This document shows positions 5,008 to 23,562 of a stretch of DNA of 64,000 nt, one piece after another (the first letter of the stretch is position 1; each line of letters opens with the position of its first letter). The translations under genes and the position numbers were made by a program. The stretch spans positions 158,907 to 222,906 of IMG/VR virus record IMGVR_UViG_3300013233_000093; one strand, written 5' to 3'. The notes beneath the pieces are model-generated. The model was given only the letters and a program-made list of their open reading frames with translations. It made no database searches and was not told the DNA's origin.

Positions 5008-5037
5008 GGCTGTACTCAGTTTCTGTGTTTACCAAAT

Positions 5038-5757: not shown

Positions 5758-5766
5758 CAGTTGAAC

Positions 5767-5802: not shown

Positions 5803-5849
5803 ATTATATCGAACAGTATTACTTGACTATAACTACGAGAGCTTATAAC

Positions 5850-6493: not shown

Positions 6494-6495
6494 CC

Positions 6496-6912: not shown

Positions 6913-7097
6913 ACGACTATATTAACAACGAGTTTGCTAATGCTACTTCGTGGACTAAGCTAAAACTATTATACAAACTTATCAGTACAATGCCTGCGTT
7001 AAAGTGGACGCTGGTGGTTTTTGTGGTACCCAGTCTGCTGGGCACCATCATGGGCGTTGCAGGGTTAATCGGCGTCATAGGGAGTATACTACCATGA
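6909..7097 (+). CDS. Small membrane protein
   Basis: C-terminal hydrophobic stretch; overlaps both neighbours. Confidence 0.7.
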   Translation: MNDYINNEFANATSWTKLKLLYKLISTMPALKWTLVVFVVPSLLGTIMGVAGLIGVIGSILP

Positions 7098-7375
7098 TCG
7101 ACTTTATATTAGCGGCGGTAATTGGAGCGGCCACCGTGTATGCATGTCCCATAATGCTTCACGTCAGCATGGTGCCCGTCGTGATATACCGTACATTGAG
7201 ATTGTTAGTAACACCATTATCAGTGGCCTTTGTGGCCTTTGTCGCATTTAGTAATTACCAAGGACTATACAAGATGACAAGATACGAAACCAGCGTCTTA
7301 GCCATAGCGACGATCGCGTTCGCTGTAATCAACATTGTTATTTGGCTTGTTGTAAAATCCAAGAAGGATGAGTAA
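7094..7375 (+). CDS. Small membrane protein (3 TM)
   Basis: Start MIDFIL after GGAG, ATGA overlap. Confidence 0.7.
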   Translation: MIDFILAAVIGAATVYACPIMLHVSMVPVVIYRTLRLLVTPLSVAFVAFVAFSNYQGLYKMTRYETSVLAIATIAFAVINIVIWLVVKSKKDE

Positions 7376-7377
7376 CT

Positions 7378-8010
7378 ATGTTTATCGTAGTAGAAGGATC
7401 TGACGGCTCCGGTAAATCCACCGTATGCCAATACATTGTGAAGTACCTTACCGCGAATAAGATACCTTGCATATCGGTATCCGACTTAGACGGTAATCGA
7501 TACGGTGCTATGTTTAGAGATATGCTGGAAAATCCGAGGGTACCGCCACCCTCGCTGATTACCAAGACATTGTTGTTACTAACGTCCCGCTCTGAAAACG
7601 TTAATAACACTATCTTACCCGCGTTAGACGACGGCAAGGTCGTTGTATCAGATCGTTATATAGACAGCACTGTTGTGTATCAAGGAGCAGAAGGGCTGGA
7701 TGTGGGCACCTTACGCACACTAAACTCGTTTGCAACCGATAACCTGGTGCCGGATTTGACCATCCTATTACAAGTGGAACCTGATATAGCCAAGGCTAGA
7801 ATACTATCGAGCGGGGCACCCGATGAGATGGAAGCCAGTATGATGAGTCGGATATCTGAACTCAACGATCGGTATGTTAACGAGATACGACACACTACGG
7901 TATTGATTGACGCTAATCAACCCGTGACACAGGTGCTGGAAACGATACGGGAAGTGTTGGTGTCTGCGCTAGCTGACCATGTACTGGGCGACGTGATGGA
8001 TTCGCAATAA
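7378..8010 (+). CDS. tmk: Thymidylate kinase
   Basis: FIVVEGSDGSGKST P-loop, VVSDRYIDSTVVYQG, PDLTILL. Confidence 0.95.
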   Translation: MFIVVEGSDGSGKSTVCQYIVKYLTANKIPCISVSDLDGNRYGAMFRDMLENPRVPPPSLITKTLLLLTSRSENVNNTILPALDDGKVVVSDRYIDSTVVYQGAEGLDVGTLRTLNSFATDNLVPDLTILLQVEPDIAKARILSSGAPDEMEASMMSRISELNDRYVNEIRHTTVLIDANQPVTQVLETIREVLVSALADHVLGDVMDSQ

Positions 8011-8013
8011 CTA

Positions 8014-8048
8014 TAATGACTGCTGCTTGTGTGGCGGTCATTATGCTG
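8014..8048. terminator. Stem-loop ending in TATGCTG
   Basis: ATAATGACTGC...GCGGTCATTAT-GCTG. Confidence 0.6.
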
Positions 8049-8060
8049 TTCTCCAGATTT

Positions 8061-8086
8061 ATTCAAAACTATATCACTATTATGAT
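8061..8086 (+). promoter_or_regulatory. Early promoter motif
   Basis: Exact 26-nt copy. Confidence 0.8.
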
Positions 8087-8103
8087 ACTTAGGTAATGTA
8101 TTG

Positions 8104-8211
8104 ATGGTGTATTTAGTTGTAACGGCGTTTGTGTTGTGGGTACTTGCACTCGCAGTAGGCGTGGTATTCGAGGCGTTTATGTGGGCGTACGATAAGTTAA
8201 CAAATCGTTAA
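8104..8211 (+). CDS. Single-TM micropeptide (35 aa)
   Basis: MVYLVVTAFVLWVLALAVGVVFEAFMWAYDKLTNR directly after promoter. Confidence 0.6.
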   Translation: MVYLVVTAFVLWVLALAVGVVFEAFMWAYDKLTNR

Positions 8212-8261
8212 CGTGTAATCAACCAGCGACAATCATGTCGCTAAACAGAAGGTATGAAAAA

Positions 8262-8357
8262 ATGAACGAAGTGGTTTTTGGCGTGGTAATAATTGTGATG
8301 GCTTTGTCCATCATATCACTGGCCGGTATTGCTTATAAGGCGAGTGATGATGTTTAA
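8262..8357 (+). CDS. Single-TM micropeptide (31 aa)
   Basis: MNEVVFGVVIIVMALSIISLAGIAYKASDDV; AAGG RBS. Confidence 0.6.
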   Translation: MNEVVFGVVIIVMALSIISLAGIAYKASDDV

Positions 8358-9018
8358 TCCAAGATGTGAGTTTGGGCGGGCGTGCGCCACAGTAGTGCTG
8401 GAAGAAGGTATTTCCTTCATCGTGTTAACGGCCAAGCTTGAGATGGCCAACGATGTACGTTATACGTACGGGGGCAATCACACACAGTTGCCCACCAACA
8501 TGGCGGGTAGGATCATTAGATCTGATTTGTCAGACCGCAGTAAGCGCGTCCTGTATCTGGCATACATGTTAGAATGTCCAGCACCCATCCTTCATCTAGC
8601 AGGGCTGTCTGTGGAAGGCAGGAGACGTTTGGCTTCTGTGTATGCACCGGTGTCCTACACGCACCGTGTACCGTCCGCACGGAAATTGATTGCTGGTAGA
8701 AACATAAGTCTGCCTAGCAAGGCGCCGTTTAACACATTCCACAATGCCATTACCGAGCACCGTGTTAAAATGGGCGTGACCGTCACCCATTTAGCGGAAC
8801 GCGTTGGCTATAGTCGTCGTCACTTTGATAAGCTGATGCATTTATCCCACGGCTTTAAACTCGATATCTGCAGTGTGCTTGCCGATCTCATGCATCTTGA
8901 CGTAGATCAAGATCATGATCTGGTGCACTGTTACTTCGAGTCTACTGATGTGCCGGTGGTTACGTTGCCGGTGTTCGAAGAAGTGGTGGACCTATTACTA
9001 GAGGAGCATGCTAAATGA
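8347..9018 (+). CDS. XRE-HTH protein
   Basis: HRVKMGVTVTHLAERVGYSRRHFDKL; paralog of 9015. Confidence 0.7.
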   Translation: MMFNPRCEFGRACATVVLEEGISFIVLTAKLEMANDVRYTYGGNHTQLPTNMAGRIIRSDLSDRSKRVLYLAYMLECPAPILHLAGLSVEGRRRLASVYAPVSYTHRVPSARKLIAGRNISLPSKAPFNTFHNAITEHRVKMGVTVTHLAERVGYSRRHFDKLMHLSHGFKLDICSVLADLMHLDVDQDHDLVHCYFESTDVPVVTLPVFEEVVDLLLEEHAK

Positions 9019-9581
9019 ACGTCAATTATGTAATGTCATTGTTCATATCGGACATCATAAAGCCGTGTGCGGGTAAAGCTGTTTTACGCTGTGACGAGGT
9101 AGACAAGCCCAGTACCGTGCGCATGTACGAGGCTTACCTTTTGCAGTGCAAAAGTCCAATGATTGACATTGGTCATTTGAACAGCGAGCAGAAGAAGTTA
9201 CTTGCGGACGTATACAGTTCATGTAACATGCATCATGCGCTTGGTAAATACCCCTTGGCATTAGGGGACACGCATTATGCGAGATCAAAAACACCGTTTG
9301 GTGAGATGGTCAATCGTATCCGCATTAGCAATAACGTGGATATACATGAGTTTGTAAAGGGACTTAGCATCAGTCGGTCTCACTTCCGCGGGGTTTGTCA
9401 AGGCACATACACACCTCGCGTCGATTATGCCACGCGCATTGCCACCATGATGCGCCTGGGTGATGACGAGTACAAGGCCCTAGTGCGGACGTATTTTGAT
9501 TCATACGATCGATTAGCAGTACGCCCTAACACTGGCTTTGCTGCTTACGCCGCCGAGTTGATCGTGAACGCATACGACTAA
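9015..9581 (+). CDS. XRE-HTH protein
   Basis: TPFGEMVNRIRISNNVDIHEFVKGLSISRSHFRGVCQG. Confidence 0.7.
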   Translation: MNVNYVMSLFISDIIKPCAGKAVLRCDEVDKPSTVRMYEAYLLQCKSPMIDIGHLNSEQKKLLADVYSSCNMHHALGKYPLALGDTHYARSKTPFGEMVNRIRISNNVDIHEFVKGLSISRSHFRGVCQGTYTPRVDYATRIATMMRLGDDEYKALVRTYFDSYDRLAVRPNTGFAAYAAELIVNAYD

Positions 9582-9587
9582 CCACTT

Positions 9588-9645
9588 ACAGCATATACTG
9601 CATGGCTATGTGCCATGCAGTATATGTATCTTTTTTTATTTTTTA
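9588..9645. terminator. Bidirectional stem-loop between convergent genes
   Basis: CATATACTGCATGGC-tatgt-GCCATGCAGTATATG. Confidence 0.75.
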
Positions 9646-9881
9646 TTGTAAAGCCATTTATACAACACCGCTTTGAAGTCACTGTCTAATAGTAACGAAT
9701 CGTGATGCTTGCCCTTTAATGGCGCAGACAGTCCGTTATAATCAAGACCGCGCAGCCATCGTTCTCGTATCGTAGCTATGCTCAACACGCCATACGATTC
9801 CAGGTGTATCTGGTTAGGCGTGGTGTATTTACCATCATTGTCTTTTATCTTGCTGTGTATGCTAAACGAAGTGCGTCTCAT
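9636..9881 (-). CDS. Small basic protein, possibly a DNA-binding remnant of an HNH endonuclease
   Basis: LSIATIRERWLRG resembles HNH-associated C-terminal domains; AGGA RBS. Confidence 0.5.
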   Translation of the reverse strand: MRRTSFSIHSKIKDNDGKYTTPNQIHLESYGVLSIATIRERWLRGLDYNGLSAPLKGKHHDSLLLDSDFKAVLYKWLYNKK

Positions 9882-9924
9882 AATAAGTCCTATTGTAAGT
9901 CACACAATAACATTCTCAATGATT

Positions 9925-9950
9925 AATCAAGACTATATTACTACTATGAT
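9925..9950 (+). promoter_or_regulatory. Early promoter variant
   Basis: AATCAAGACTATATTACTACTATGAT. Confidence 0.7.
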
Positions 9951-9990
9951 AACACTTTTGTTATTGTTACGGATAAAGGTTTGAAGTAAT

Positions 9991-10416
9991 ATGCTGAACT
10001 CAGACGACATTACCGCCTTGATGTTAGAGGTCATTACACATCTTGGTATTCGCCAGGATGAATTGTGGGTTGGTGCGGGGAGCGCCATGTGTCTAGCAGA
10101 CTCAAGTCTGCGAAAGGAAACTGCAGACGTGGACACGGGTTGTTTGCCTGAACTGTACGATCGTATCGCCAAGTCTTCCCTGGTGACCGATAGTCACATT
10201 GACAAGCGGTATAGCGAGTATCCCATCGTAACGTTACTGGATTACGTCGACGTGCATCGCGAGGAAGAAAAGCCTGACGACTTGGTATCTACTGGGAGCG
10301 TTACATACGCTTCTATGGAAAGCGTGCTGGAGTTTAAACGCGGGTTAAACCGTTCAAAAGACCAGCGCGACATTCGCGCGTTGGAAGTCTACATTGCATT
10401 GAAAGGAAGGATTTAA
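9991..10416 (+). CDS. Minimal nucleotidyltransferase (Pol-beta superfamily)
   Basis: GAGSAM...RKETADVD, later VDV, C-terminal K..LNRSKDQRD. Confidence 0.7.
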   Translation: MLNSDDITALMLEVITHLGIRQDELWVGAGSAMCLADSSLRKETADVDTGCLPELYDRIAKSSLVTDSHIDKRYSEYPIVTLLDYVDVHREEEKPDDLVSTGSVTYASMESVLEFKRGLNRSKDQRDIRALEVYIALKGRI

Positions 10417-10505
10417 AGGACCGGCGCCGATTAATCCTTAGTATCGCGGCGATATTATACAGTGATGCAACCGTATCACTGTAACAACCAAAGAGAGTAA
10501 CTATT

Positions 10506-11504
10506 ATGAACATCAGTATGATGGACAACGTGTTGGCACTTAAGATGTTTGATGAATGTGAGTTCATCGTGCATCTGGAATCCGATGAGGATAACAATCC
10601 CACAAGCATTGGCTTTAGCTACTACGGGGAAAACATTTTAATCAATGCGTATAAGAAACAGTTGAACATGACGGAGTCGTGTATCGAATGGCGGTATGAC
10701 AGCAAGTACGACTTTGAATCGGTGACACGCACCACCAAAGGATTATTCGATCTAATCCACATCACCAAGGAAGCACACGCTTTATTTTTGAAGCTTGTGT
10801 CTCAACAGCTTGTGGTATTACGTACCATTACACCCTTGCTGAAGAACGTCACTAGCCTGGTAAAGAATAATGTCGGGAGCGGTGACAATAAGGTCGGTGA
10901 TGTACTGGCGCTAGCCGCGCTCATTGCTTTGGAGGCCTCTGAAGAAGATCTGTTAGCAATCGATCACAACCCGTCCACTGTAAAGGATACAGTGACCATG
11001 GGACGGGTTATCACCGCATCAGGTAATAACCGCGATATGCTGACTCGCTGTGTGGGCAAGCCGTGGTTGTTTGACACTACCACGTTTGATGCCGCATGCA
11101 TGACAACCACGCACACGGACAGAGGCATCGCAGTGTCTCTGATCGAAAGCAGTCCTGGTGAGATGTCTGCACACATTCTTTCGTACGACAAGATTGACGA
11201 CAGCGTTATCTTGACGCGAGAGTTTGAGTCGGCACTGTTGAAGGCGGGTGGTGTGGACACACGTCTCACTGCGGTATCTGTGTTAATCTACGCCATGTCA
11301 AAAGTGGGCATGGATACTGTAACATACGAGATGTATGTAGACGAAGTAAATCGAATGGTGTCGATTGCAGCGTGTACAGAAGACTTCATTCCTCTGTACG
11401 ACGACATCGAATCGCTGGAAGGCATTAACAAGGAGTCGTTCCGGTTAAACCACGAGCTGTATCCCTTGGCACTACACGATGTTAAGATGGCGGTATTGGG
11501 TTAA
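10506..11504 (+). CDS. Hypothetical protein
   Basis: 332-aa ORF with AACCAAAGAGA leader. Confidence 0.8.
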   Translation: MNISMMDNVLALKMFDECEFIVHLESDEDNNPTSIGFSYYGENILINAYKKQLNMTESCIEWRYDSKYDFESVTRTTKGLFDLIHITKEAHALFLKLVSQQLVVLRTITPLLKNVTSLVKNNVGSGDNKVGDVLALAALIALEASEEDLLAIDHNPSTVKDTVTMGRVITASGNNRDMLTRCVGKPWLFDTTTFDAACMTTTHTDRGIAVSLIESSPGEMSAHILSYDKIDDSVILTREFESALLKAGGVDTRLTAVSVLIYAMSKVGMDTVTYEMYVDEVNRMVSIAACTEDFIPLYDDIESLEGINKESFRLNHELYPLALHDVKMAVLG

Positions 11505-11539
11505 ACTTGTTTTACCAACAAACATAAGAGGTAACATTT

Positions 11540-12226
11540 GTGAAGAAGACAAAGCTCGCGCTAGAGTCATGGCATCCCACCGCTATGCGTCGTCGGTCGG
11601 TCGTAGCGAACGTAGGGGAGGGCTATCCTGTCCCAGGCATACTGGGTGTGCTAGGCCTGTACATCCAATCGTTTTGTGATGCGCAGGGTGTTTCCATTCG
11701 ATCGTTCACCACACGGGTGGGCATCGCGCCGCCAAGGATGTGTAAGATCTTGGAAGGCAAAGTGGTGGTAAGCCGTACACACTTGGGACTTATCCATGAC
11801 TACATGCGATCCAGGGCAGGGGATGACTTTGACCAGCGTGACTGGAGAAAGATGGTCGCGGTGATAACGGGCAAGGAGGAACATCCGGTAGGCAAGTTGG
11901 TACGCAGTCTATTAGCGCCCACCGAGGCCGACATGCGGAAGCTCGCGAGCTATATGATGATTACCACAGGTTATCTGCATCGCATATGCGCTGGATCAGA
12001 GGCGTTGAATTACAGCAACTCGGTGAAGATCCGTCGCTATGCGAAATCGATAGGTGTGGATAGCGCAGAGTTAACAGAGGTGTTGCAGGTTAACACCTCT
12101 CAGTTATCAGCCAGCTCCATGGAAGACCGGTTTAAAGCCCTGTCTTCTGATCAACAAGCCACGATCGTTAAGATCATGGCTTGTATGGAGGTGGATAACG
12201 ATGCCCCAGTACACAAACGTACGTAA
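11540..12226 (+). CDS. Double XRE-HTH protein
   Basis: QGVSIRSFTTRVGIAPPRMCKILEG and MRKLASYMMITTGYLHRICAG. Confidence 0.65.
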   Translation: MKKTKLALESWHPTAMRRRSVVANVGEGYPVPGILGVLGLYIQSFCDAQGVSIRSFTTRVGIAPPRMCKILEGKVVVSRTHLGLIHDYMRSRAGDDFDQRDWRKMVAVITGKEEHPVGKLVRSLLAPTEADMRKLASYMMITTGYLHRICAGSEALNYSNSVKIRRYAKSIGVDSAELTEVLQVNTSQLSASSMEDRFKALSSDQQATIVKIMACMEVDNDAPVHKRT

Positions 12227-12479
12227 GCCGTTTAGGGACTTCGCTATTGACAACTGCAGCATCATCATCATCGTCGACGGTGTACGGTGTAACATCGGAT
12301 ACCAGGAGATGACAATGACCACGTTAAACGCCAACGTGACTCATGCGTACAAGGTAACTGATGGATATGTGGACATATGCTTGTTTACGCTTACACACCG
12401 TACGAGGATTGTATCACAGCGTAATGCAGATCGGTATTACGTAACCCACTCACTCATTTCGGAACAGGAAAGATCCTAA
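12201..12479 (+). CDS. Hypothetical protein
   Basis: GGAGG RBS, operon continuity. Confidence 0.65.
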   Translation: MPQYTNVRKPFRDFAIDNCSIIIIVDGVRCNIGYQEMTMTTLNANVTHAYKVTDGYVDICLFTLTHRTRIVSQRNADRYYVTHSLISEQERS

Positions 12480-13270
12480 TGAATACAAAAGGTTTTATCA
12501 CTTGCAATGCCCACTCCATGTGGTCTGAAAACGACATACGCGGTGCCTTAGAGCCGTATCTAAATGTGGCAGTAACGCATACGAATGCTCTGCGGTCTAC
12601 CGTCATGCTGTGTGTGTTTCGCACAGACGGCACTATCCTAGCACGACAGTCGTTGAGTACCGGCACTGTATCCTACACACCAGAGTCAAAAATCTGGTCT
12701 AAGTACATGCTGGACACGTCTACCGACGTAATGGCAGTGACCAGTTCTGTACGGAGTCTACGTGCGTTACTGAAACCGGTTAGTCCTGATGGGTTAAACA
12801 GCTTGGCGTTTTTAAAGATCAGTACCTTTCGCATGAGGGGCAGTGTATCTGAACGTGCGTTAAGTCAGTTGCAATCCATCGTCATTAATGGTGATGGTGA
12901 TGGTGGCAATCCGGATTGCGGTAAGTTGACGACGGACGTGGATAGCAGTGGCGCCATGACTGTTACGTCAAGTTCTGCTCAAGCTGGGTTTGAAACGCCC
13001 GGGCGTACGCGAAAGGGAGAATACATAATCGTCTCTTCGTCGGACAGTCACGTCATCACCGCTTCTAACATTGTCAATGCTAAGCACAAGTGTAGCTTAC
13101 ACATGACAGTCGTGTCAAACGGCAAATGTCCTACCGGTACGTGGACGTATGGCATTGGTACGTACCGAGCTGATTTATCAACTCCGTGCGGATTTGATGA
13201 GATAGTCTCTCAAGTAACTCCGATAGCAGGACAGCTCTCTAATTGGGCAGATCGCTATCTAGGAAAATAA
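12479..13270 (+). CDS. Hypothetical beta-rich protein, probable paralog of 16727
   Basis: SENDIRGALEPYL vs SEGDVSVALSPSL; VFRTDG vs VFTRDG; similar length. Confidence 0.65.
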   Translation: MNTKGFITCNAHSMWSENDIRGALEPYLNVAVTHTNALRSTVMLCVFRTDGTILARQSLSTGTVSYTPESKIWSKYMLDTSTDVMAVTSSVRSLRALLKPVSPDGLNSLAFLKISTFRMRGSVSERALSQLQSIVINGDGDGGNPDCGKLTTDVDSSGAMTVTSSSAQAGFETPGRTRKGEYIIVSSSDSHVITASNIVNAKHKCSLHMTVVSNGKCPTGTWTYGIGTYRADLSTPCGFDEIVSQVTPIAGQLSNWADRYLGK

Positions 13271-13271
13271 T

Positions 13272-13302
13272 AACCCTTCAACCCTTCAACCCTTCAACCT
13301 TC
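13272..13302 (+). repeat. AACCCTTC tandem repeat (3 copies plus a partial)
   Basis: Read directly, just upstream of an AGGAG RBS. Confidence 0.9.
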
Positions 13303-13317
13303 TCTAGGAGAGAAACA

Positions 13318-13464
13318 ATGTTTAACTGTTTAACTGAGTATCGCGTAGCGTCATCCCGTATTGCATTGGGCTTCTTTGTATTTGGCGTGGCAAGCGTCGT
13401 GTATAAATACCGTTATCCCGTGGCAATCATTGCGGCATACGCCGCGTTATACCAGTTGGTTTAA
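13318..13464 (+). CDS. Small membrane protein (48 aa)
   Basis: AGGAG RBS, two hydrophobic segments; hairpin 13476-13500 follows. Confidence 0.65.
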   Translation: MFNCLTEYRVASSRIALGFFVFGVASVVYKYRYPVAIIAAYAALYQLV

Positions 13465-13520
13465 CAACCCCTTTAGCAGTCGGCGTTTTACGCCGACTGC
13501 CTTTATACAGGATTATCAAA

Positions 13521-13703
13521 ATGAGATTACACATATTGCTGCTTATCGCGCTGGCAGTCGCCACGGGCATTTGGATAAACGCGCTTTTGGCCAGTCACAG
13601 CGTATCCATAAGCGGGTACCAAGATCCACACAAAGACTTCAAGCCGGGTCTATGTCAGGCATGTCACCCACTGCCACCACGGTACCCTGGACGCGTAACA
13701 TGA
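13521..13703 (+). CDS. Membrane-anchored or secreted peptide with CxxCH heme-c motif
   Basis: Hydrophobic residues 1-24, then DPHKDFKPGLCQACH; AGGA RBS; stop overlaps next ATG. Confidence 0.7.
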   Translation: MRLHILLLIALAVATGIWINALLASHSVSISGYQDPHKDFKPGLCQACHPLPPRYPGRVT

Positions 13704-14179
13704 TTATGACACCGGATGCACACAGTGTACGAGAATCACACGGAGCTGATGTAATAGCAATCATTGGAATGGCGGGGTTTGTGGTGTTCGACATCACATG
13801 GATACAGTCGCATCTAACCGCTATGATGGTGCCCGTGGTTGTGCTCGCGTCGCTGATCGCAGCGGCATTGATTAACAAAGCTTCCTCTCATATACTTATG
13901 GATGGGTTAATCCGTGGCAATGAGCAAAGAGCTTACTGGGCAGTAGCACGATCTGTGTCACACGATCACGGACTGCTTGCCACCTTATACGCCGCAGTGG
14001 GTTTGGTCGTGGGCTGTAACATTTACTTCTACTCCATAGACGCGACGTTTATGTCTGACGTGTTTATAGGGACGTGTGTGTATGCGAGTATCATGCACGG
14101 CAGGTACGCAGCTGTGCGATCGGTACAGCCTTACTTTATCGTTAGCACGGAACAGGAGCAGTCATGCGATACACTATGA
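13700..14179 (+). CDS. Four-TM membrane protein 1
   Basis: Start 13700 (ATGA overlap), 159 aa, two TM hairpins. Confidence 0.75.
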   Translation: MIMTPDAHSVRESHGADVIAIIGMAGFVVFDITWIQSHLTAMMVPVVVLASLIAAALINKASSHILMDGLIRGNEQRAYWAVARSVSHDHGLLATLYAAVGLVVGCNIYFYSIDATFMSDVFIGTCVYASIMHGRYAAVRSVQPYFIVSTEQEQSCDTL

Positions 14180-14604
14180 AGCGGCAAGATTTGGAGTATG
14201 CTAAAAAGGACGTGGTGATGGCAGGTGTATACAACGCATCCGGCATTACGGCATTTACCCTGGTGGACATATTGATGCACGCGGGCGGGTATACGTACCA
14301 CTTGATGGCGATCGCGGCATTGGTGATACTTACCATGGTTATCGTAGATTATTATGCCAGTCAGTTACATGACCTTGTGTCTGTCGACGATATCGCCACC
14401 TTCGATACCGACATCCTTGTGCATTACGTTAAGTTTGTCATTTATGCGTGCACTGCTATAAGCGGTTTCTGCTTCTTATGGCTTACGTTACAACCAAACC
14501 ATTTTGCGCCGCCGCTGGTGGCGATCGTTTACTTTACACACATGCGTCTATTCTGGATGGTGTGGTTTGTAAAAATAAAAAAGGAGTCTTCTGATGAATC
14601 TTAA
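14164..14604 (+). CDS. Four-TM membrane protein 2
   Basis: Same architecture; alternative start 14176. Confidence 0.75.
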   Translation: MRYTMKRQDLEYAKKDVVMAGVYNASGITAFTLVDILMHAGGYTYHLMAIAALVILTMVIVDYYASQLHDLVSVDDIATFDTDILVHYVKFVIYACTAISGFCFLWLTLQPNHFAPPLVAIVYFTHMRLFWMVWFVKIKKESSDES

Positions 14605-14628
14605 AGAGCTTAAAGAGGATTGTGCACT

Positions 14629-15048
14629 ATGTACACCGACGAAAGCTTAGAAGATAGGGCTGCGTTTCTACACAACTTTACACAGGCGTATGTAATGGGA
14701 ATGGCTATTTATACGACATTTTATTACATCATATCAGGATCTGCAATGGCATTGCTCCCGCTTGCTTGCTTAACTGCACCAAGCTTTGTCGTAATATGGT
14801 GGAAGGCGGAGGTGCGGCGACAGCCGCTTATTACGGATGGGTATAAAAAACGTGTGAGTATTGCAAGAAGTATATTCGACATTAGCTTACATTGCGTGTT
14901 AGCGTACTACGCGATCGCAGCGGTGCGTGCAGGATTTACGCCAGAGTCGTTTACGCACGTGGTTATAATGGCGTTAACTTACACTGTGGCTGCAGGGGCG
15001 TCTGAGATATCGCTGCCGGGCGACGACTTGACGTCTACGCCGAAATAA
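14629..15048 (+). CDS. Four-TM membrane protein 3
   Basis: GAGG RBS, same architecture. Confidence 0.75.
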   Translation: MYTDESLEDRAAFLHNFTQAYVMGMAIYTTFYYIISGSAMALLPLACLTAPSFVVIWWKAEVRRQPLITDGYKKRVSIARSIFDISLHCVLAYYAIAAVRAGFTPESFTHVVIMALTYTVAAGASEISLPGDDLTSTPK

Positions 15049-15107
15049 AGGTTTGCGGTAACTAAGCAAGTAATGTCACATGCTTATCATTAATGAGGAA
15101 TGGTGTT

Positions 15108-15533
15108 ATGAGTAAAACAGATCCATTACGAGGCTATACCGGACTTGGGTTTCAGGACGTTATTTGGTTCGCGTATACCGTGTACACGGTAAATACAATG
15201 ACGACTGATATACCCATAATAATGTCGTGGGCGTTTGCCACTGCATTAACTGGATGGGTTTTTGGCTTGCACTACAGCACAGCTGCATACACGAGTCGGA
15301 TTAACCTTCACGCCGCGCGTCAGGCAACGGATAGGAATATGGCGATGACTGTAAAGGCGTGCGTCATAACACACGCCATATTTTTACTGTCTGCATTGGC
15401 GACCTCCGTACTCGTTATCGGATACGCAGACGACATTAACAAAATGCATATCGGTTACCTAATCGTATCAGGTATTTACATGCTACTTAACGCACTCTTT
15501 GCCGTGCTAATCATGGGGGACGTTAAGCGATGA
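15108..15533 (+). CDS. Four-TM membrane protein 4
   Basis: GAGG RBS, same architecture. Confidence 0.75.
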   Translation: MSKTDPLRGYTGLGFQDVIWFAYTVYTVNTMTTDIPIIMSWAFATALTGWVFGLHYSTAAYTSRINLHAARQATDRNMAMTVKACVITHAIFLLSALATSVLVIGYADDINKMHIGYLIVSGIYMLLNALFAVLIMGDVKR

Positions 15534-15961
15534 ATAAACCATTTGCGGTGATTGCCAAGTTCGTGTTTATTTGGATGATCTTGACGTGGTTTACCCATGA
15601 GACTGTCGTGCCCATAGTAAAGGCGGGTTTAGAAGTGAGTGGGGATCAGCTGCTCGTGTTTGGATTTATGTTAGTCTACATGACCATAGCGTATATTCTA
15701 ACACACCGCTGCAGCACACTCGTCTATTTAATGGAAGACCGTCCGTGTGTTGATGTACGTAAATCCTTGATTAGAACTATGTCAGTGGATGTGATTGTAC
15801 AAGTGTTGTTTATAGTAACTGCGTGGTACCTGCTTCCGTCTACACCTGTAGAAGTATTGTTACTTACTTGTGGTCTACTTATCGTGTACGTATCAGTGCT
15901 TTACATTAACATACGCCGCATGGACAAAGCTAGGGTGTCGTTGCAAGGAGACGTCAAATAA
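15530..15961 (+). CDS. Four-TM membrane protein 5
   Basis: ATGA overlap, same architecture. Confidence 0.75.
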   Translation: MNKPFAVIAKFVFIWMILTWFTHETVVPIVKAGLEVSGDQLLVFGFMLVYMTIAYILTHRCSTLVYLMEDRPCVDVRKSLIRTMSVDVIVQVLFIVTAWYLLPSTPVEVLLLTCGLLIVYVSVLYINIRRMDKARVSLQGDVK

Positions 15962-15962
15962 A

Positions 15963-16439
15963 ATGGATACACCAGGTATGGTGGTGATAGAATGTGAGTC
16001 AGTGGTGCTGGATGCTATGACAGGACTGTCATTTGGCATAATGTGCATGGCAATGGCTAACTACCTATTCGTGGGTAGCTGGCACCTGACGTTCCTTTTA
16101 GTAGTCGGGGTACTGATAAGTAATTACCGGCTACGTGGCGTCTTATCTCGATACCGTTGTTTGTTACAGCAAGATTATACATCAAGCATGGACTACATGA
16201 CAAGCAACGTTGTGTCATCCACCTCTTCAATTGCACTGCTGTTCATACTGTTTAGCGTGGCCACTGCGTACACAGCAGTGCATACAGTCATGTGGCCTGC
16301 GTTACTCATTACTTATATAGTGACTGCATTACTATACTGGAAGGTCAACAACGCACTGAGTTATTACACACTCTCGGTGAATCACCACAGATCCCAGTTT
16401 ATACGTAATACAGTCACGGGTAGGTACGAACGTGTGTAA
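15963..16439 (+). CDS. Four-TM membrane protein 6
   Basis: Start MDTPG after AGGAG, same architecture. Confidence 0.75.
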   Translation: MDTPGMVVIECESVVLDAMTGLSFGIMCMAMANYLFVGSWHLTFLLVVGVLISNYRLRGVLSRYRCLLQQDYTSSMDYMTSNVVSSTSSIALLFILFSVATAYTAVHTVMWPALLITYIVTALLYWKVNNALSYYTLSVNHHRSQFIRNTVTGRYERV

Positions 16440-16456
16440 TTTGCGTTCGTCTGTAT

Positions 16457-16480
16457 GATAACGCTATATTACCTTAGTGA
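16457..16480 (+). promoter_or_regulatory. Early promoter variant
   Basis: CTATATTACCTTAGTGA, like 23563 CTATATTACTTTAGTGA. Confidence 0.6.
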
Positions 16481-16541
16481 GGCATGCGACCTTGCATGTT
16501 GTAACCATAGGTGCCATAACCTACAAAGATAGGTATGGTAA

Positions 16542-16724
16542 GTGAAGAGTATGAAATTAGATGTAGAGTCTCTACTGATCGCCGTTGTGGCGGTCGTTGT
16601 TCTTGTCGGGTGTTTTGCACCTGACGCTTCCACAGGTCGTACTTATAAAGAGTACGGCCCTTCTGAAACAGAAGCGGCGCAGTTGCGTCGCGATTATGGG
16701 CCTGCGAGGCCCAAAGGATATTAA
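16542..16724 (+). CDS. Small predicted lipoprotein
   Basis: Hydrophobic leader ending in LVGC lipobox. Confidence 0.65.
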   Translation: MKSMKLDVESLLIAVVAVVVLVGCFAPDASTGRTYKEYGPSETEAAQLRRDYGPARPKGY

Positions 16725-16726: not shown

Positions 16727-17536
16727 ATGTTTGTTGCCCGTAACTACAACGCCAAGGCTAGCATTAGCCTTGGCGTATTAACCAGTGAGGGGGATGTGTC
16801 TGTTGCACTGTCCCCCTCACTGAGAGGAGTGGAACACGGCTACGCAGTGATCGCCACTCTGCGGGGAGGTGCCATGAAAGCACTAGCCCCAGCTGGCCGT
16901 GTGCTGGAAGCCTGCACAGGTTTCCAGGTATTTACCAGAGATGGTAAATACCTTGTTCTAGGCACTGCTGTCGGTGACGACAGTGCTTATATCCGTCTCT
17001 TCAACCGCTATGGTAAAAACATAGCGGCCGTGTTCGAGGCGGGAGACGTAGATTCTTTTACGTTCTCCTCCTCATTTCTGGAGTCCATTATTAATGGACT
17101 CTTGGTGGCCTCTGGGAATTTTCCCAGAGAGTCACAGTGGGGGCGCAAGTCCTTCTCTTCCAAGACCAGCGATGGCTTGGATCCATGCATGCCCAAACTG
17201 GGCACCCAGAGCACCCAGGCGGGTACAATGCAGGTAAACGGTGATATGAAGAATATCACCATCGACATCACCACCCGTGAGGGGAAAGTGATGGCGTTGA
17301 AAGCGCTTAAGAAGCACACCCGCACCGCCTACAGTGTGTCCGACGATCTGTCCATGGTAGTATGTGCACAGCAAAACGCTGCGGGAGATCATTTCCGCAG
17401 TAAACTGTCAGTCTACACCTTCGGTGATGGAGAGTATCTCCACACCGCTACGGTGTGGCTGCCCGTCGATCACGACGGGGTTATGGGTCACACAGAAATG
17501 TGTGACCGGGTCGGCCACATGTTAAGAGGAGGCTAA
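16727..17536 (+). CDS. Hypothetical beta-rich protein, probable paralog of 12479
   Basis: AAGGA RBS; blade-like FTRDG and SVSDDL. Confidence 0.7.
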   Translation: MFVARNYNAKASISLGVLTSEGDVSVALSPSLRGVEHGYAVIATLRGGAMKALAPAGRVLEACTGFQVFTRDGKYLVLGTAVGDDSAYIRLFNRYGKNIAAVFEAGDVDSFTFSSSFLESIINGLLVASGNFPRESQWGRKSFSSKTSDGLDPCMPKLGTQSTQAGTMQVNGDMKNITIDITTREGKVMALKALKKHTRTAYSVSDDLSMVVCAQQNAAGDHFRSKLSVYTFGDGEYLHTATVWLPVDHDGVMGHTEMCDRVGHMLRGG

Positions 17537-17607: not shown

Positions 17608-18690
17608 ATGAGTACATACTTACAAGGCATCATAGACGGGGAACCTGCGAAGTTCTTTACGTCTGCATCTAAAAACGGTGACTGTGTTGTAACCTACGAT
17701 AACACAAGTGTCGGCGTATTGCACACTAAGTGCATCGTAAATTCCAGTTGGACTGCGTTACCTGATGTCACTGTCCCGACCGTTACGGGTGATAAGTTCA
17801 GTGGGCTGTTTGCAATAAGCGGAGACGGGCAGCGACTATTCACTGCGGGATACGCCGCGACAGGCACTGTAAACATTTACGTGCGTCAGAGAATCACGGC
17901 AGGTTGGGCATCTCCAATAAGCGTAATAACCACGGTTACTGCGTATGATTTACACACACAGCTTATTGTTTCTTATGACGGATCGTTAGTCGTTATCAAC
18001 AGCATAGACAATCTGACAAAGGCGTCTGAGTTCTATCTGTTTAAAGCCACTACGGCATGGCCTGCGATACCACACGTTATCACAGCAGATAGGATAAGTT
18101 GTAGTAACGATGGCACCCGTGTCGTCTGTGGCACTGCATGCGGGTTAACTGCTCGAGGTAAGGCAGACTTGCTTTACTACGATAATGGAACATGGCTTCC
18201 TCCTGTAAGTCTCGATGCCAAGCTCACTGGGCGATCGTCCACGCGGGACGGTTTAGTGACGATATCAGGGGACGGACTCACTGTGGTGTGCGCTGCGCTG
18301 TTAAACCCACCCAGGGGATCCACAGTAGGGACTTATTCACTTGTGCGATATCAACTGGCTGAAATCGGGAACGTCGCTTACGCGGGCGTTATAGGCGCCA
18401 GAACGGGATGCGGTATACAAGAGCTACCAGCAATCATCCAGAACATTGTGATCTGCACTCGCGGGGAGAACGTCCTTGTGTATGGAGTAGATGCTGCAGG
18501 CGGGATGGTCTCTGATCTGTACACGATGAAAGACGCGTTATGGCGGGTGATAAAAGCACCTGCTACCGTGGAACTTATTACCCTGCAATCTGTATCTGCA
18601 CCCAGAGCTTACGTATGCAATAACGCCGATGCGTACATGATTACCTATGCCACACCGAATGGTGTAGAACGATCCAGTATACTAAAGTGA
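17608..18690 (+). CDS. Stand-alone beta-propeller, degenerate FG-GAP-like
   Basis: AISGDG, IVSYDG, SCSNDG, TISGDG blade turns. Confidence 0.7.
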   Translation: MSTYLQGIIDGEPAKFFTSASKNGDCVVTYDNTSVGVLHTKCIVNSSWTALPDVTVPTVTGDKFSGLFAISGDGQRLFTAGYAATGTVNIYVRQRITAGWASPISVITTVTAYDLHTQLIVSYDGSLVVINSIDNLTKASEFYLFKATTAWPAIPHVITADRISCSNDGTRVVCGTACGLTARGKADLLYYDNGTWLPPVSLDAKLTGRSSTRDGLVTISGDGLTVVCAALLNPPRGSTVGTYSLVRYQLAEIGNVAYAGVIGARTGCGIQELPAIIQNIVICTRGENVLVYGVDAAGGMVSDLYTMKDALWRVIKAPATVELITLQSVSAPRAYVCNNADAYMITYATPNGVERSSILK

Positions 18691-18701
18691 GGTAAATAAG
18701 A

Positions 18702-19853
18702 ATGAGTATCTTTTATAAGCACCAAGTGTTTGAAGGTAATGCTGAAGTACAGGACATGGCCGTCTCCACCGACGGCACAATGTTGGTGATTGGTCGACCT
18801 GACCTGTCCAGTGTATCCATTTATGAGAAACTGGCTACTGTACCGACCTTTGATGTCCCTGTATCATTAGACATGCCTGAAAGAAGAAACTTCGGCTATG
18901 CAGTGGCGCTATCAGGTGATCTTAATACCATTGCAGTGGGTTACTCAGAAATAGCCGTAGAGGACACCTACATGGCTCCTGAGTTCACCCACGTGGTTAT
19001 GTTTATCCGCAATGATCTCGGCAACTGGATTGAAGACGGTGAGGTATCGGTAGGCTTAAACGGAGTAACTCCCGATACGATACGACTGTCGTTCGACGGA
19101 CTTACGTTAACCGTGGGCGGCAGTGACCTTGTGTATACACTTATAAAGGATCCCGTGAACGGCGATGTGTTGGATACGGAAGATCTTCCGCTTACCGCTC
19201 AGTTGTTTGAGCGATCGTTGGCTGATCCTTGGCATGCCGTAAAGGCGGTGCGGGCAGGCAACATAGACGGGCTACAGCAAGCGTTTGGCGGGAATGCGTG
19301 GACAGTGAATAACGTCGCTGGTGCAGTGGATGAGATGATGGTCTCTACTGAATGGCGTCATGGACCTGTGGCAGGCTGTCGTATGTACAGAGTAACGAAG
19401 AAAGCCGGTATTTGGACCGCGCCGGTTTTGGATGTATCCGCTATGGGCAGCGACATTGTTATGTCAGACGACATGACTGTAATGATCGTGTCTGTCACGT
19501 CTAACGTGCCACAGGCCGGTTTGTTTCATATGTACGCACGCACTCCAGGCGGTGCGTGGAGTGTGCCTACCGTGATCCTAAAGCCTCCTCTGGCAGATGA
19601 CCTGTTGTTTGCCCTTAACCTAGGAATGAGTTCTGATGGATTATGGCAGTCCGCTACAGCAAGGCATTACGATGCGCCATCAGGTAACGTATACGTATAT
19701 AAAGCAGGTGTGTATAACGGACGCATTGTAACCGGAGATGTCACGCGGACTTCGTTTGGTAAAATTACCAGATTGCCCTCATTACCACAGCCCGTAGTCT
19801 ACGTGTCGGACGGTTCTAATGTAAACCAGTATACTACTGTATTACCATTATAA
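18702..19853 (+). CDS. Stand-alone FG-GAP-like beta-propeller
   Basis: NFGYAVALSGDLNTIAVG, AVSTDG, LSFDG, GMSSDG, SGNVYVY. Confidence 0.75.
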   Translation: MSIFYKHQVFEGNAEVQDMAVSTDGTMLVIGRPDLSSVSIYEKLATVPTFDVPVSLDMPERRNFGYAVALSGDLNTIAVGYSEIAVEDTYMAPEFTHVVMFIRNDLGNWIEDGEVSVGLNGVTPDTIRLSFDGLTLTVGGSDLVYTLIKDPVNGDVLDTEDLPLTAQLFERSLADPWHAVKAVRAGNIDGLQQAFGGNAWTVNNVAGAVDEMMVSTEWRHGPVAGCRMYRVTKKAGIWTAPVLDVSAMGSDIVMSDDMTVMIVSVTSNVPQAGLFHMYARTPGGAWSVPTVILKPPLADDLLFALNLGMSSDGLWQSATARHYDAPSGNVYVYKAGVYNGRIVTGDVTRTSFGKITRLPSLPQPVVYVSDGSNVNQYTTVLPL

Positions 19854-19874
19854 CAATATAAAATCGGAGAGAAG

Positions 19875-20990
19875 ATGACTTACGCAGACAACGTCCGCAA
19901 ATGCATAGACATGGACATGAGCGCAGACGGACGCAGTTGCGTTACGCTGGACAGAGTGATGGATAATAAAGACGCCATCGGTACCCTACATCACCACACT
20001 TTGTTGGGCGGTGAATGGCACAACACCCGTACCTTTCAAATACCCACGTTGTTCAAGACATCTGTGTCGTATGAAACGGTACAGGCCGTGTGTATATCAG
20101 GAGACGGTAACGTAATGGCTGTGACGACCAATTTCAGTTATCGTGTATACGTCAAATCCTTATACGACGGCAACATTTGGATGCCTGTTATAACGCACTC
20201 TTATCGATACGATAAGATCGCCACGACACGAGGCGCCAGACCTACGCTAAGTTATACGGGCAACAAGCTTATGCTTTCCCCGATAGGACATACTCCTAAA
20301 CGATGTAGGTTAAAACTGGTATACCTCACGGCTAAGTTTGATTACAACCAAGTAGGTAAGTATAATGACTTATCCATAAACCCCACGTTTTACTGGGATG
20401 TAACTAACGTGGCCGTGAGTGAGATAAGTACGAGTTACATCGTCGGGATTATCACAGAAGCCACTGTACGTCAGGCGCGACATAAGGGCAATGGCGTGTT
20501 GCGTGTAGAGGACATCACAGGTCACCTGCAGAAAAAGATCCGTGATGTACGTCTGTACGGACTGTATGTGGAACCACGCAACATTTGCCATCATCAAGAT
20601 GAACGTGAAATGGCGTACATCAATGGCTTAGAAGGTGCGTTACACGTACTGCCATATGACACACAGAAGCAAGTCATCGTGACAGACATGCCGGACAATA
20701 CTGTCGCCACAGGCACGGTGTCTTCCAGCTTAGACGGTGATATCATCGCAGTGAGTGTGTGCAGATCCGGTACATACGGTTTACTCATATTTAAACGACG
20801 CGGTAGGGTATACGATGTGGCAAGGTTTGTGGATACCAATTCCAACGACGCCATTAACCCGATCGCTGTCTATAAGGTAAGTCCTTGTGGTAATCACTTG
20901 GACTACAGCGTCCCCACTAAAATAGACCCTGCTACAGGGGAACGTGGGGACTGGACACGCTTACAACTTAACATTGTTGAAAAGGATTAA
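19875..20990 (+). CDS. Stand-alone degenerate beta-propeller
   Basis: DMSADG, CISGDGNVMAV, SSLDGDIIAV. Confidence 0.7.
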   Translation: MTYADNVRKCIDMDMSADGRSCVTLDRVMDNKDAIGTLHHHTLLGGEWHNTRTFQIPTLFKTSVSYETVQAVCISGDGNVMAVTTNFSYRVYVKSLYDGNIWMPVITHSYRYDKIATTRGARPTLSYTGNKLMLSPIGHTPKRCRLKLVYLTAKFDYNQVGKYNDLSINPTFYWDVTNVAVSEISTSYIVGIITEATVRQARHKGNGVLRVEDITGHLQKKIRDVRLYGLYVEPRNICHHQDEREMAYINGLEGALHVLPYDTQKQVIVTDMPDNTVATGTVSSSLDGDIIAVSVCRSGTYGLLIFKRRGRVYDVARFVDTNSNDAINPIAVYKVSPCGNHLDYSVPTKIDPATGERGDWTRLQLNIVEKD

Positions 20991-23493: not shown

Positions 23494-23562
23494 TTACTGC
23501 GTGCTCCATATGTGGATTTATTAGACATACGATACTTAACTGTGTTCGCTACTATCTACTAT

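What the first reader, a model, noticed from the sequence alone, without database searches (positions are those of the whole stretch)
13700..16439. Tandem array of six same-size four-TM proteins coupled to the CxxCH peptide
Seen: six consecutive 139-159 aa ORFs, mostly overlapping or abutting, each TM-TM, ~30-aa polar loop, TM-TM, with little visible sequence identity; several have His in or beside helices. Inference: anciently expanded paralogs forming a hetero-oligomeric membrane complex or a panel against different host proteins; with the heme peptide, a possible respiration/membrane-potential control system. His is common in this region, so heme-b binding is speculative.
Basis: partly seen in the sequence, partly recalled or inferred. 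Interest (0 to 1): 0.72.

Follow-up and report, generated by a model that had tools for sequence, protein, structure and literature searches.

The report
Orphan four-helix membrane gene array
A rare jumbo phage from a microbial mat carries a tight row of six genes for small, same-shaped inner-membrane proteins with no detectable relatives, most likely accessory proteins that alter the host membrane early in infection; nothing beyond one short motif ties them to heme or respiration.

Summary
Window 13700-16439 holds six same-strand, closely packed genes of 139-159 aa. Each has a Shine-Dalgarno-like site and phage-like codon usage in its own frame only. Each shows a 2+2 hydrophobic-helix pattern around a 21-32 aa polar segment. 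Charge distribution puts both termini and the central segment in the cytoplasm in all six.

A 60-aa signal/anchor peptide with one CxxCH overlaps the first gene by ATGA. A 48-aa two-helix ORF lies upstream and a 60-aa lipoprotein-like ORF downstream.

- No protein tested has a homolog or family match.
- Only the D-E pair shows weak colinear similarity.
- His is not enriched and follows no heme-b pattern.
- The complex prediction gave no answer and the structure models were low-confidence.
- The array sits in a ~15 kb lineage-specific block that the nearest relative lacks at the syntenic site.
- That block carries copies of a 24-copy promoter-like motif, which I infer to be the early class.

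Best guess, at low confidence: early accessory inner-membrane proteins for superinfection exclusion or another membrane-level conflict function.

The parts
9913..9960 (+). Nearest upstream copy (a variant) of the genome's 24-copy conserved promoter-like motif; inferred early-class promoter of the unit that runs into the array
   Evidence: motif TATTCAAAACTATATCACTATTATGAT, 24 copies, all on the + strand. The analogy is to AR9 early promoters, which were found by motif over-representation (PMC5312081).
13318..13464 (+). 48-aa ORF with two hydrophobic segments (small membrane hairpin protein), preceded by AGGAGAG
   Evidence: codon score 0.27 in its true frame (listed there as frame +2 of a start I had set one base off)
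13475..13501 (+). Strong GC-rich hairpin (10-13 bp stem, TTTTA loop) 20 nt before the CxxCH ORF; a possible terminator, attenuator or RNA-stability element
   Evidence: -24.9 kcal/mol, z -5.25, 0 of 200 shuffles fold as well. The consensus terminator scan did not call it.
13521..13703 (+). 60-aa ORF with an N-terminal signal/anchor helix (residues 5-23) and CQACH at 45-49; its TGA overlaps the ATG of gene A
   Evidence: AGGA lies 8 nt upstream. Codon score is ambiguous, the sequence is not in the public gene calls, and it is the only CxxCH among this ORF and the genome's 226 selected ORFs of 60 aa or more (0.2 expected).
13700..14179 (+). Gene A, 159 aa, 4 predicted TM helices, N-in/C-in
14176..14604 (+). 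Gene B, 142 aa (146 aa from 14164), 4 predicted TM helices, acidic central segment
14629..15048 (+). Gene C, 139 aa, 3-4 predicted TM helices, strongly basic central segment
15108..15533 (+). Gene D, 141 aa (146 aa from 15093), 3-4 predicted TM helices; weak paralog of E
15530..15961 (+). Gene E, 143 aa, 4 predicted TM helices; ATGA-coupled to D and weakly similar to it
15963..16439 (+). Gene F, 158 aa, 4 predicted TM helices, basic 32-aa C-terminal tail
16444..16485 (+). Variant of a second promoter-like motif class (CGTTCG...CTATATTACCTTAGTGA) just after the array; marks the likely start of the next transcription unit
   Evidence: four near-identical copies elsewhere: genome 16190, 64230, 98454 and window 23563
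16542..16724 (+). 60-aa lipoprotein-like ORF (lipobox LVGC) at the head of the tail/baseplate gene run
   Evidence: codon score 0.27; weak sub-threshold hit to the EexN entry-exclusion lipoprotein family, E 0.23

Best explanation
The array is a lineage-specific accessory module of a divergent phiKZ-like jumbo phage. It encodes six small integral inner-membrane proteins. Each has two helical hairpins, with both termini and a 21-32 aa central segment in the cytoplasm. They are translated from one tightly packed, partly translationally coupled transcript. Three more small envelope ORFs sit with them: a 48-aa two-helix ORF, a 60-aa exported or anchored CxxCH peptide, and a 60-aa lipoprotein. The module lies at the far end of what looks like an early transcription unit. 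The most likely role is to modify the host cytoplasmic membrane soon after infection. That could mean blocking genome entry by superinfecting phages, as P22 SieA and T4 Imm do, or neutralising other membrane-level attacks. The several divergent copies may give breadth of specificity. Shown: gene reality, membrane topology, orphan status, absence from the nearest relative at the syntenic site, position relative to the promoter-like motifs. Inferred: early timing, inner-membrane site of action, exclusion or conflict function.
For: Gene reality and packing.

Uniform N-in/C-in four-helix topology: K+R 51 against 2. AF2 secondary structure shows four long helices for A and D, at low pLDDT.

Only such array in the genome, and none in Vibrio phage Yong XC31.

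The phage is phiKZ-like. The baseplate gene matches phrog_3216, with best cultured relatives at about 42% identity. Split RNA polymerase beta and beta' hits are present.

Accessory status. In the only long relative (204-kb JGI contig, baseplate protein 54% identical), the flanking genes are syntenic, but window 1885-16724 is replaced by about 0.9 kb holding two small soluble ORFs.

Early-type context. Four copies of the 24-copy promoter-like motif lie inside the block, at window 5043, 8066 and 9930, or at its upstream edge (1087). The nearest copy upstream of the array is at 9930, and a different motif class follows at 16464. In AR9, over-represented motifs of this kind proved to be vRNAP early promoters (PMC5312081).

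No lysin next to the array.

Precedent. P22 SieA is a 162-164 aa inner-membrane protein with 3 TM helices (4 in types B and C). [quoted passage not shown]
Against: There is no homology to any exclusion, immunity or defence-related family, so the function rests on context and analogy only.

The hairpin at 13475-13501 could terminate the early transcript, and no promoter-like motif lies between it and the array. The timing is therefore unproven, and no RNA data exist.

Known exclusion proteins are single genes, not six-gene arrays.

The CxxCH peptide is unexplained by this model.

Orphan genes in hypervariable phage regions can have almost any function.
Confidence: 0.33

Rival explanations
1. 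Lysis-timing module: the six proteins are holin, antiholin or pinholin-like proteins. The adjacent lipoprotein would be a spanin-like or other lysis accessory.
For: The proteins are small and multi-TM, several with charged C-terminal tails. Gordonia phages carry up to four TM-protein genes from distinct families in or near lysis cassettes (PMC9671378). A small lipoprotein ORF follows the array.
Against: None of the ten flanking ORFs searched has a muralytic or any lysis-related family match. PG_binding_1, Phage_lysozyme, SLT and GH19 gave no hit anywhere in the genome; the GH19 search also failed on its control genomes, so it shows nothing. The array sits in a block with early-type promoter-like motifs. 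No i-spanin-like ORF precedes the lipoprotein, which appears to start the next unit. There are no holin family matches.
Confidence: 0.15
2. One reading: a hetero-oligomeric membrane complex that uses the CxxCH peptide as a small membrane-anchored c-type heme protein to tap or control host respiration or membrane potential.
For: The CxxCH motif lies in the predicted periplasmic part of a signal/anchor peptide whose stop overlaps gene A's start. It is the only CxxCH among that ORF and the selected proteome, against 0.2 expected. The nearest named clusters by language-model features are NapC/NirT N-terminal fragments and other c-type cytochrome families (score 0.89). Every one of the six proteins has a His at a periplasmic helix boundary (permutation p 0.01-0.04, post hoc). 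The gene overlaps fit co-assembly.
Against: The atlas score is below the tool's 0.9 lead threshold, with few shared features (129), and probably just reflects TM + CxxCH. There is no HMM or PDB sequence match to any cytochrome. The peptide's codon score is ambiguous, it is not in the public gene calls, and a sixth heme ligand in so short a peptide is uncertain. His is not enriched in the six and there are no conserved intramembrane His pairs. The His-at-interface test uses a lenient null. The complex prediction gave no answer. The array is absent from the nearest relative.
Confidence: 0.05
3. A homo- or hetero-oligomeric ion channel or small-solute transporter that depolarises or conditions the membrane for host takeover. 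This would work like lambda RexB, with no exclusion role and no heme.
For: The size and four-helix layout resemble small channel-forming phage proteins; RexB is about 144 aa with 4 TM helices (from my own knowledge, not tested here). The genes are tightly coupled. Polar or charged residues lie inside several predicted helices: D31 in A, R124 in B, K10 in E.
Against: There is no match to RexB or any transporter or channel family. The fold search gave nothing specific (E > 0.2) on low-confidence models. Six different subunits would be unusual for so small a channel.
Confidence: 0.12
4. Fast-evolving or recently originated orphan membrane ORFs with little or no selected function, retained in a hypervariable region.
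For: No homologs in the databases searched. The genes lie in a block absent from the relative. AF2 confidence is low.
Against: All six keep long open frames, ribosome-binding sites, phage-like codon usage and a strictly consistent positive-inside topology. That is not expected of unselected sequence. The lineage is barely sampled, so a lack of homologs is weak evidence.
Confidence: 0.1

Closest known systems
P22 SieA superinfection-exclusion protein (types A-C)
   Same: A phage-encoded protein of about 160 aa that sits exclusively in the inner membrane, with 3 predicted TM helices (4 in types B and C). Its sequence types are only about 25% identical yet keep the same helix layout. It acts on incoming phage DNA delivery (PMC10883804).
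   Different: No sequence similarity was detected. SieA is a single gene expressed from a prophage in a temperate podophage. Here there are six different genes in a lytic-type jumbo phage. The conserved cytoplasmic SieA motif FxRYPxEAxxFNK is not seen in A-F (read).
Runs of holin-like TM-protein genes in actinophage lysis cassettes (Gordonia phages)
   Same: Several TM-protein genes, each from a different family, with orphan members inserted among them (PMC9671378).
   Different: Those genes sit beside or are functionally tied to lysA/lysB, have 1-4 TM helices of mixed topology, and number at most four. Here no lysin is nearby, the context looks early, and six genes share one topology.
Lambda RexB
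   Same: A phage inner-membrane protein of about 144 aa with four TM helices that affects membrane potential (from my own knowledge).
   Different: There is no Pfam or PADLOC match. No RexA-like partner was identified. RexB is a single gene expressed from a prophage.
NapC/NirT/NrfH-type membrane-anchored c-type cytochromes (for the 60-aa peptide only)
   Same: An N-terminal membrane helix followed by a CxxCH motif on the periplasmic side. These are the nearest named clusters by language-model features.
   Different: The peptide has one motif instead of four, only 11 residues follow it, and there is no HMM or PDB sequence match. The score is below the tool's own confidence threshold.
Strings of non-identical tandem immunity genes next to polymorphic toxins (e.g. 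T7SS esaG)
   Same: Tandem, divergent, same-size genes thought to give breadth of protection (PMC9484751, abstract seen). That the TspA immunity protein TsaI is a polytopic membrane protein is from my own knowledge.
   Different: Those paralogs are recognisably homologous and bacterial. Here five of the six show no detectable similarity to one another, and no toxin gene is associated.

Membership tests
Single paralogous family (tandem duplicates) | Statistically significant pairwise or profile similarity between members | tested here: inconclusive
   D-E: Smith-Waterman Z 5.2 (full shuffle) and 3.6 (block shuffle), 6-11 of 3000 block shuffles reach the score, shared C-terminal GDVK. The other 14 pairs are at noise level by BLASTP, phmmer, shuffles and hhalign. 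No DNA repeats.
Single paralogous family (tandem duplicates) | Same fold and topology | tested here: inconclusive
   The same 2+2 helix layout and N-in/C-in charge bias hold in all six. AF2 gives four long helices for A and D, but pLDDT is 42 and 51. B, C, E and F were not modelled.
b-type cytochrome four-helix membrane proteins (cytochrome b561 / Ni_hydr_CYTB type) | Family HMM match | tested here: not met
   No Pfam or NCBIfam hit at E <= 1.
b-type cytochrome four-helix membrane proteins (cytochrome b561 / Ni_hydr_CYTB type) | Conserved pairs of intramembrane His ligands | tested here: not met
   A His deep in a helix occurs in only three of the six (B H122, C H88, D H89), at non-equivalent positions. 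His is not enriched.
c-type cytochrome (60-aa peptide) | CxxCH motif in a Sec-exported or anchored domain | tested here: met
   CQACH at residues 45-49, after a hydrophobic helix at 5-23.
c-type cytochrome (60-aa peptide) | Sequence or profile similarity to a cytochrome c family | tested here: not met
   No Pfam, NCBIfam or PDB sequence hit. The atlas feature score of 0.89 is a lead only.
c-type cytochrome (60-aa peptide) | Covalent heme attachment by a host maturation system | not testable with these tools
   The host is unknown. This needs heme staining or mass spectrometry.
Holins | Match to a holin family | tested here: not met
   No Pfam or PHROG hit.
Holins | Genomic linkage to an endolysin or spanins | tested here: not met
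   The flanking ORFs searched have no lysin match. Four lysin-related Pfam families gave no hit in the genome, though the GH19 search also failed on its control genomes. The endolysin itself was not located, so distal linkage cannot be excluded.
Holins | Late expression | not testable with these tools
   No RNA data. The promoter-motif context suggests early expression, which is an inference.
Inner-membrane superinfection-exclusion proteins (SieA / Imm type) | Small integral inner-membrane protein encoded by the phage | tested here: met
   By prediction only: hydropathy and positive-inside bias.
Inner-membrane superinfection-exclusion proteins (SieA / Imm type) | Sequence homology to a known exclusion family | tested here: not met
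   No hit in Pfam, PHROGs, PADLOC or NCBIfam.
Inner-membrane superinfection-exclusion proteins (SieA / Imm type) | Blocks genome entry of a second phage | not testable with these tools
   Needs expression and phage challenge.

The most novel reading that the evidence does not exclude
The seven coupled genes encode a phage-built inner-membrane assembly. In it, a membrane-anchored one-heme mini-cytochrome c (the 60-aa CxxCH peptide, matured by the host's own system) docks on six different four-helix subunits, each of which presents a periplasm-facing His. The phage would use it to draw on or short-circuit the host electron-transport chain or membrane potential early in infection. No respiratory-type device of this kind is known from a phage.
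Probability: 0.04. Interest if true: 0.85.

Novelty: new variant of a known kind. Interest (0 to 1): 0.4.

Why it matters
Small phage membrane proteins decide who can enter, when the cell lyses and whether membrane-based defences fire. Most of them are invisible to homology searches. A six-gene array of same-topology orphan proteins in a nucleus-forming-type jumbo phage is unusual. If it proved to be a multi-specificity exclusion or anti-defence panel, it would show a new way for lytic jumbo phages to guard an infected cell at the membrane. If the heme reading were true, it would be a first for phage biology. As it stands, this is a well-defined, synthesisable 3.4-kb test object, not a result.

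Tried and rejected
Family searches. Pfam, PHROGs, PADLOC and NCBIfam on all six proteins, the peptide and the two small flanking ORFs gave nothing at or near threshold.

Homolog searches. Each found only the query itself or nothing: D by exhaustive phmmer against 1.84 billion representatives; B and E by word-seeded HMMER against 5.8 billion proteins; A and F by tblastn against 50,697 phage records; blastn of the locus against the phage records. C was checked only for its own 90% cluster, which is a singleton.

The search for related loci in IMG/VR with D, with the 269-aa neighbour and with the baseplate protein found nothing.

Atlas feature search for A and D returned unnamed clusters below 0.9.

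AF2 models of A and D had pLDDT 42 and 51. Foldseek of the D model against AFDB clusters and BFVD gave E > 0.2 and generic helical hits. I did not search PDB or the atlas with such low-confidence models.

Complex prediction with A+B+C and the CxxCH peptide as partner returned 'no answer' (score 0.00, pLDDT about 42). This is evidence neither for nor against binding.

MAFFT alignment of the six does not line up the helices. hhalign on single sequences and with a D+E profile gave all probabilities below 1%. A test for internal duplication (N-half against C-half) gave no signal except a weak Z of 2.8 in E.

A search for closer relatives through the phage's own 20-nt promoter core found none in IMG/VR. 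The five metagenome hits are unrelated low-GC contigs, so they are chance matches.

The rest of the relative's 204-kb contig could not be searched for the array because the record is not held.

Sequencing runs: only one microbial-mat sample holds the phage, and its small RNA run shows nothing.

From memory I considered a resemblance of the peptide to the N-terminus of class I cytochrome c551 (DPxxxFKxxxCxACH spacing). I could not verify it with any tool, so it carries no weight.

I considered B-C read-through, since they share a frame. I rejected it because two TAA codons intervene.
Full report
**What the window is.** The window is bases 158907-222906 of a 222,906-bp IMG/VR virus record with direct terminal repeats, rated 100% complete. 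ORF 21987-22904 matches the baseplate assembly family phrog_3216 (E 1e-66). Its best cultured relatives are phiKZ-like jumbo phages, led by Vibrio phage Yong at about 42% identity, followed by Xanthomonas, Pseudomonas and Erwinia jumbo phages. The genome also carries split RNA polymerase beta and beta' domain hits. So this is a divergent phiKZ-like jumbo phage. Only one public sample holds it, a microbial-mat metagenome.

| Gene | Coordinates | Length |
|---|---|---|
| A | 13700-14179 | 159 aa |
| B | 14176-14604 | 142 aa (146 aa from 14164) |
| C | 14629-15048 | 139 aa |
| D | 15108-15533 | 141 aa (146 aa from 15093) |
| E | 15530-15961 | 143 aa |
| F | 15963-16439 | 158 aa |

- The stop of the 60-aa CxxCH ORF (13521-13703) overlaps A's start as ATGA. 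A/B and D/E also overlap as ATGA.
- E/F are 1 nt apart, B/C 24 nt and C/D 59 nt.
- Every start has a Shine-Dalgarno-like motif 8-12 nt upstream.
- A codon-usage log-odds model trained on the phage's long ORFs is positive only in the annotated frame for all six: 0.09-0.27, against 0.20 +/- 0.12 for the genome's 100-200 aa ORFs.
- The gene calls on record in the public collection match B, C, E and F exactly, and D as the 146-aa version.
- Logan contigs from the source sample match with no differences across four of the gene junctions.

These are real genes.

**Membrane topology.** Hydropathy analysis gives four hydrophobic segments per protein, arranged 2+2 around a polar segment of 21-32 aa.
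- Lys+Arg counts are 51 on the N-terminus, central segment and C-terminus, against 2 on the two short inter-helix turns.
- By the positive-inside rule, all six have both termini and the central segment in the cytoplasm, with only very short periplasmic turns.
- TM1 of C and D is weakly hydrophobic, so three helices cannot be excluded for those two.
- AF2 predicts four long helices for A and D. Helices 2 and 3 extend through the 'polar loop' as a cytoplasmic hairpin. Confidence is low (pLDDT 42 and 51).

The array is the only run of small multi-helix ORFs in the genome. The same scan of the whole Yong XC31 genome finds nothing comparable.

**Are they paralogs?** All-against-all BLASTP, phmmer, Smith-Waterman with full and block shuffles, and hhalign show no similarity for 14 of the 15 pairs. 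Only D-E align colinearly over their full length.
- BLASTP gives 25% identity over 142 aa. MAFFT gives 38 identical columns, including a shared C-terminal GDVK.
- Z is 5.2 against full shuffles and 3.6 against block shuffles.
- Between 6 and 11 of 3000 block shuffles reach the observed score.

After correction for 15 comparisons this is borderline. There are no DNA repeats. Other paralog families in the genome are easily found by BLAST, and none includes these six. Common ancestry fits the shared size and topology, but it is shown, weakly, for one pair only.

**Orphan status.**
- Pfam, PHROGs, PADLOC and NCBIfam give nothing.
- D finds only itself in an exhaustive phmmer search of 1.84 billion cluster representatives.
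- B and E find only themselves among 5.8 billion proteins.
- A and F have no tblastn hit in 50,697 phage records.
- C and F are singleton clusters at 90% identity. C was not searched further.

This is less striking than it sounds, because the lineage is barely sampled. The phage's own promoter core occurs in no other IMG/VR contig and only by chance in metagenomes. The best long relative shares just 54% identity in a conserved baseplate protein.

**Genomic context.** That relative is a 204-kb JGI contig.
- It is syntenic on both sides. Its ligase-proximal 227-aa gene matches window 1154-1810. Its 267-aa gene weakly matches window 16727-17536. The beta-propeller-like, baseplate and downstream genes then follow in order.
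- Between these anchors our phage has about 15 kb (window 1885-16724) and the relative has about 0.9 kb with two small soluble ORFs. The array therefore belongs to a lineage-specific accessory block.
- A 27-nt motif, TATTCAAAACTATATCACTATTATGAT, occurs 24 times in the genome, always on the + strand and nearly always intergenic.
- In the jumbo phage AR9, which also encodes multisubunit RNA polymerases, early promoters were predicted from just such an over-represented motif, and 33 of 34 were confirmed (PMC5312081). By that analogy I infer an early-promoter class.
- Copies lie at window 1087, 5043, 8066 and 9930. The last is the nearest one upstream of the array.
- A strong hairpin (13475-13501; -24.9 kcal/mol, z -5.25) sits 20 nt before the CxxCH ORF. 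It could attenuate read-through.
- A variant of a second motif class follows the array at 16464, ahead of the lipoprotein ORF and the tail/baseplate genes.
- No flanking ORF that I searched has a lysin or other informative match. Four lysin-related Pfam families gave no hit in the genome, although the GH19 search also failed on its control genomes.

**The heme idea.**
- The peptide has a hydrophobic N-terminal helix and CQACH in the part predicted to be periplasmic.
- It is the only CxxCH among this ORF and the 226 ORFs I selected from the genome, where 0.2 are expected.
- The motif was noticed post hoc. The ORF's codon score is ambiguous and its exact sequence is not in the public collection.
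- No cytochrome family or PDB sequence matches it.
- A language-model feature search puts it nearest to NapC/NirT N-terminal fragments and other c-type cytochrome clusters. The score is 0.89 with few shared features, which the tool itself rates as a lead only.
- In the six proteins His is not enriched (2.9% against 2.4% genome-wide). No conserved intramembrane His pairs exist.
- All six do have a His at a periplasmic helix boundary (permutation p 0.01-0.04). The test is post hoc and its null is lenient.
- The complex prediction (A+B+C with the peptide) gave no answer.

**Interpretation.** What is shown is a compact, partly translationally coupled set of small envelope-protein genes, nine ORFs in all. 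They are specific to this lineage and lie in a region that looks early. What it does is inference.

I rank the explanations as follows:

| Explanation | Confidence |
|---|---|
| Early membrane-conflict function: superinfection exclusion at the inner membrane, or neutralising membrane-directed attack | about 0.33 |
| Lysis control | 0.15 |
| Channel or takeover function | 0.12 |
| Little or no selected function | 0.10 |
| Heme / respiration model | 0.05 |

The first ranks highest for three reasons. The timing context fits. Known exclusion proteins such as P22 SieA have just this size, location and rapid divergence (PMC10883804). And accessory early genes in lytic phages are typically conflict genes. 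Lysis control has precedent in runs of TM-protein genes in actinophage lysis cassettes (PMC9671378), but no lysin is linked here and the context looks early.

**Novelty.** The proteins belong to no known family. The kind of thing they are, phage accessory small inner-membrane proteins, is known. A six-member iso-topological array coupled to a CxxCH peptide is a new variant of it. Interest is moderate: the locus is clean and easy to test, but nothing so far forces an unusual mechanism.

Noticed in passing
window 1087, 5043, 8066, 9930, 40019, 55220 (24 copies genome-wide): A highly conserved 27-nt motif, TATTCAAAACTATATCACTATTATGAT, always on the + strand and nearly always intergenic. It is often followed by a short GACAAC..GTTGTC hairpin. 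It is probably this phage's early (virion RNA polymerase) promoter class.
   Followed up: partly
window 16444-16485 and 23543-23600; genome 16190, 64230, 98454: A second promoter-like class, TGTTCG..CTATATTACTTTAGTGATACTTAGGTAATAATAC, with four near-identical copies and one variant. It shares the CTATATYAC core with the first class.
   Followed up: partly
window 1885-16724: About 15 kb, including the array, a thymidylate kinase (7378-8010), several HTH-like ORFs and a second small membrane-ORF group. In the nearest relative (L003) about 0.9 kb replaces this block between syntenic flanks, so it is a hypervariable accessory region.
   Followed up: yes
window 16542-16724: A 60-aa lipoprotein-like ORF (lipobox LVGC) heads the tail/baseplate gene run. 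It has a sub-threshold similarity to EexN entry-exclusion lipoproteins (E 0.23). Its position is reminiscent of T5 Llp next to the receptor-binding protein gene (from my own knowledge).
   Followed up: partly
window 13273-13296: Three tandem copies of ACCCTTCA lie just upstream of the 48-aa two-helix ORF (13318-13464). Single copies are scattered elsewhere in the genome.
   Followed up: no
window 6496-7375: A second small group of membrane ORFs just upstream of the thymidylate kinase gene: 138 aa with two N-terminal helices, 62 aa with one, and about 93-123 aa with three.
   Followed up: no
window 17608-20990 (+), 26480-32354 (-): Runs of 360-580 aa ORFs around the baseplate gene. The minus-strand set (26480-28213, 28223-29902, 30636-32354) are BLAST-detectable paralogs. 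Pfam FG-GAP_2 hits their counterparts in the relative, and weakly hits ORF 18702-19853 on the + strand. They are probably tail-fibre or receptor-binding components.
   Followed up: partly
window 40648-43345, 47375-51116 and four genes upstream of the window: An eight-member BLAST-detectable paralog family of 400-530 aa proteins spread over the genome. Its function was not examined.
   Followed up: no
window 8329-9018 and 9015-9581: An overlapping pair of BLAST-detectable paralogs with an HTH-like C-terminal segment. ORF 11540-12226 has a weak HTH_31 hit (E 0.065), and ORF 2720-3535 has weak matches (E 0.001-0.008) to PHROG transcriptional-regulator families.
   Followed up: partly
window 60596-63910 (-): A 1104-aa protein whose residues about 300-730 match glycoside hydrolase or peptidase domains of jumbo-phage and other phage tail lysins. 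It is probably the virion-associated cell-wall hydrolase. The gene runs into the terminal repeat.
   Followed up: partly
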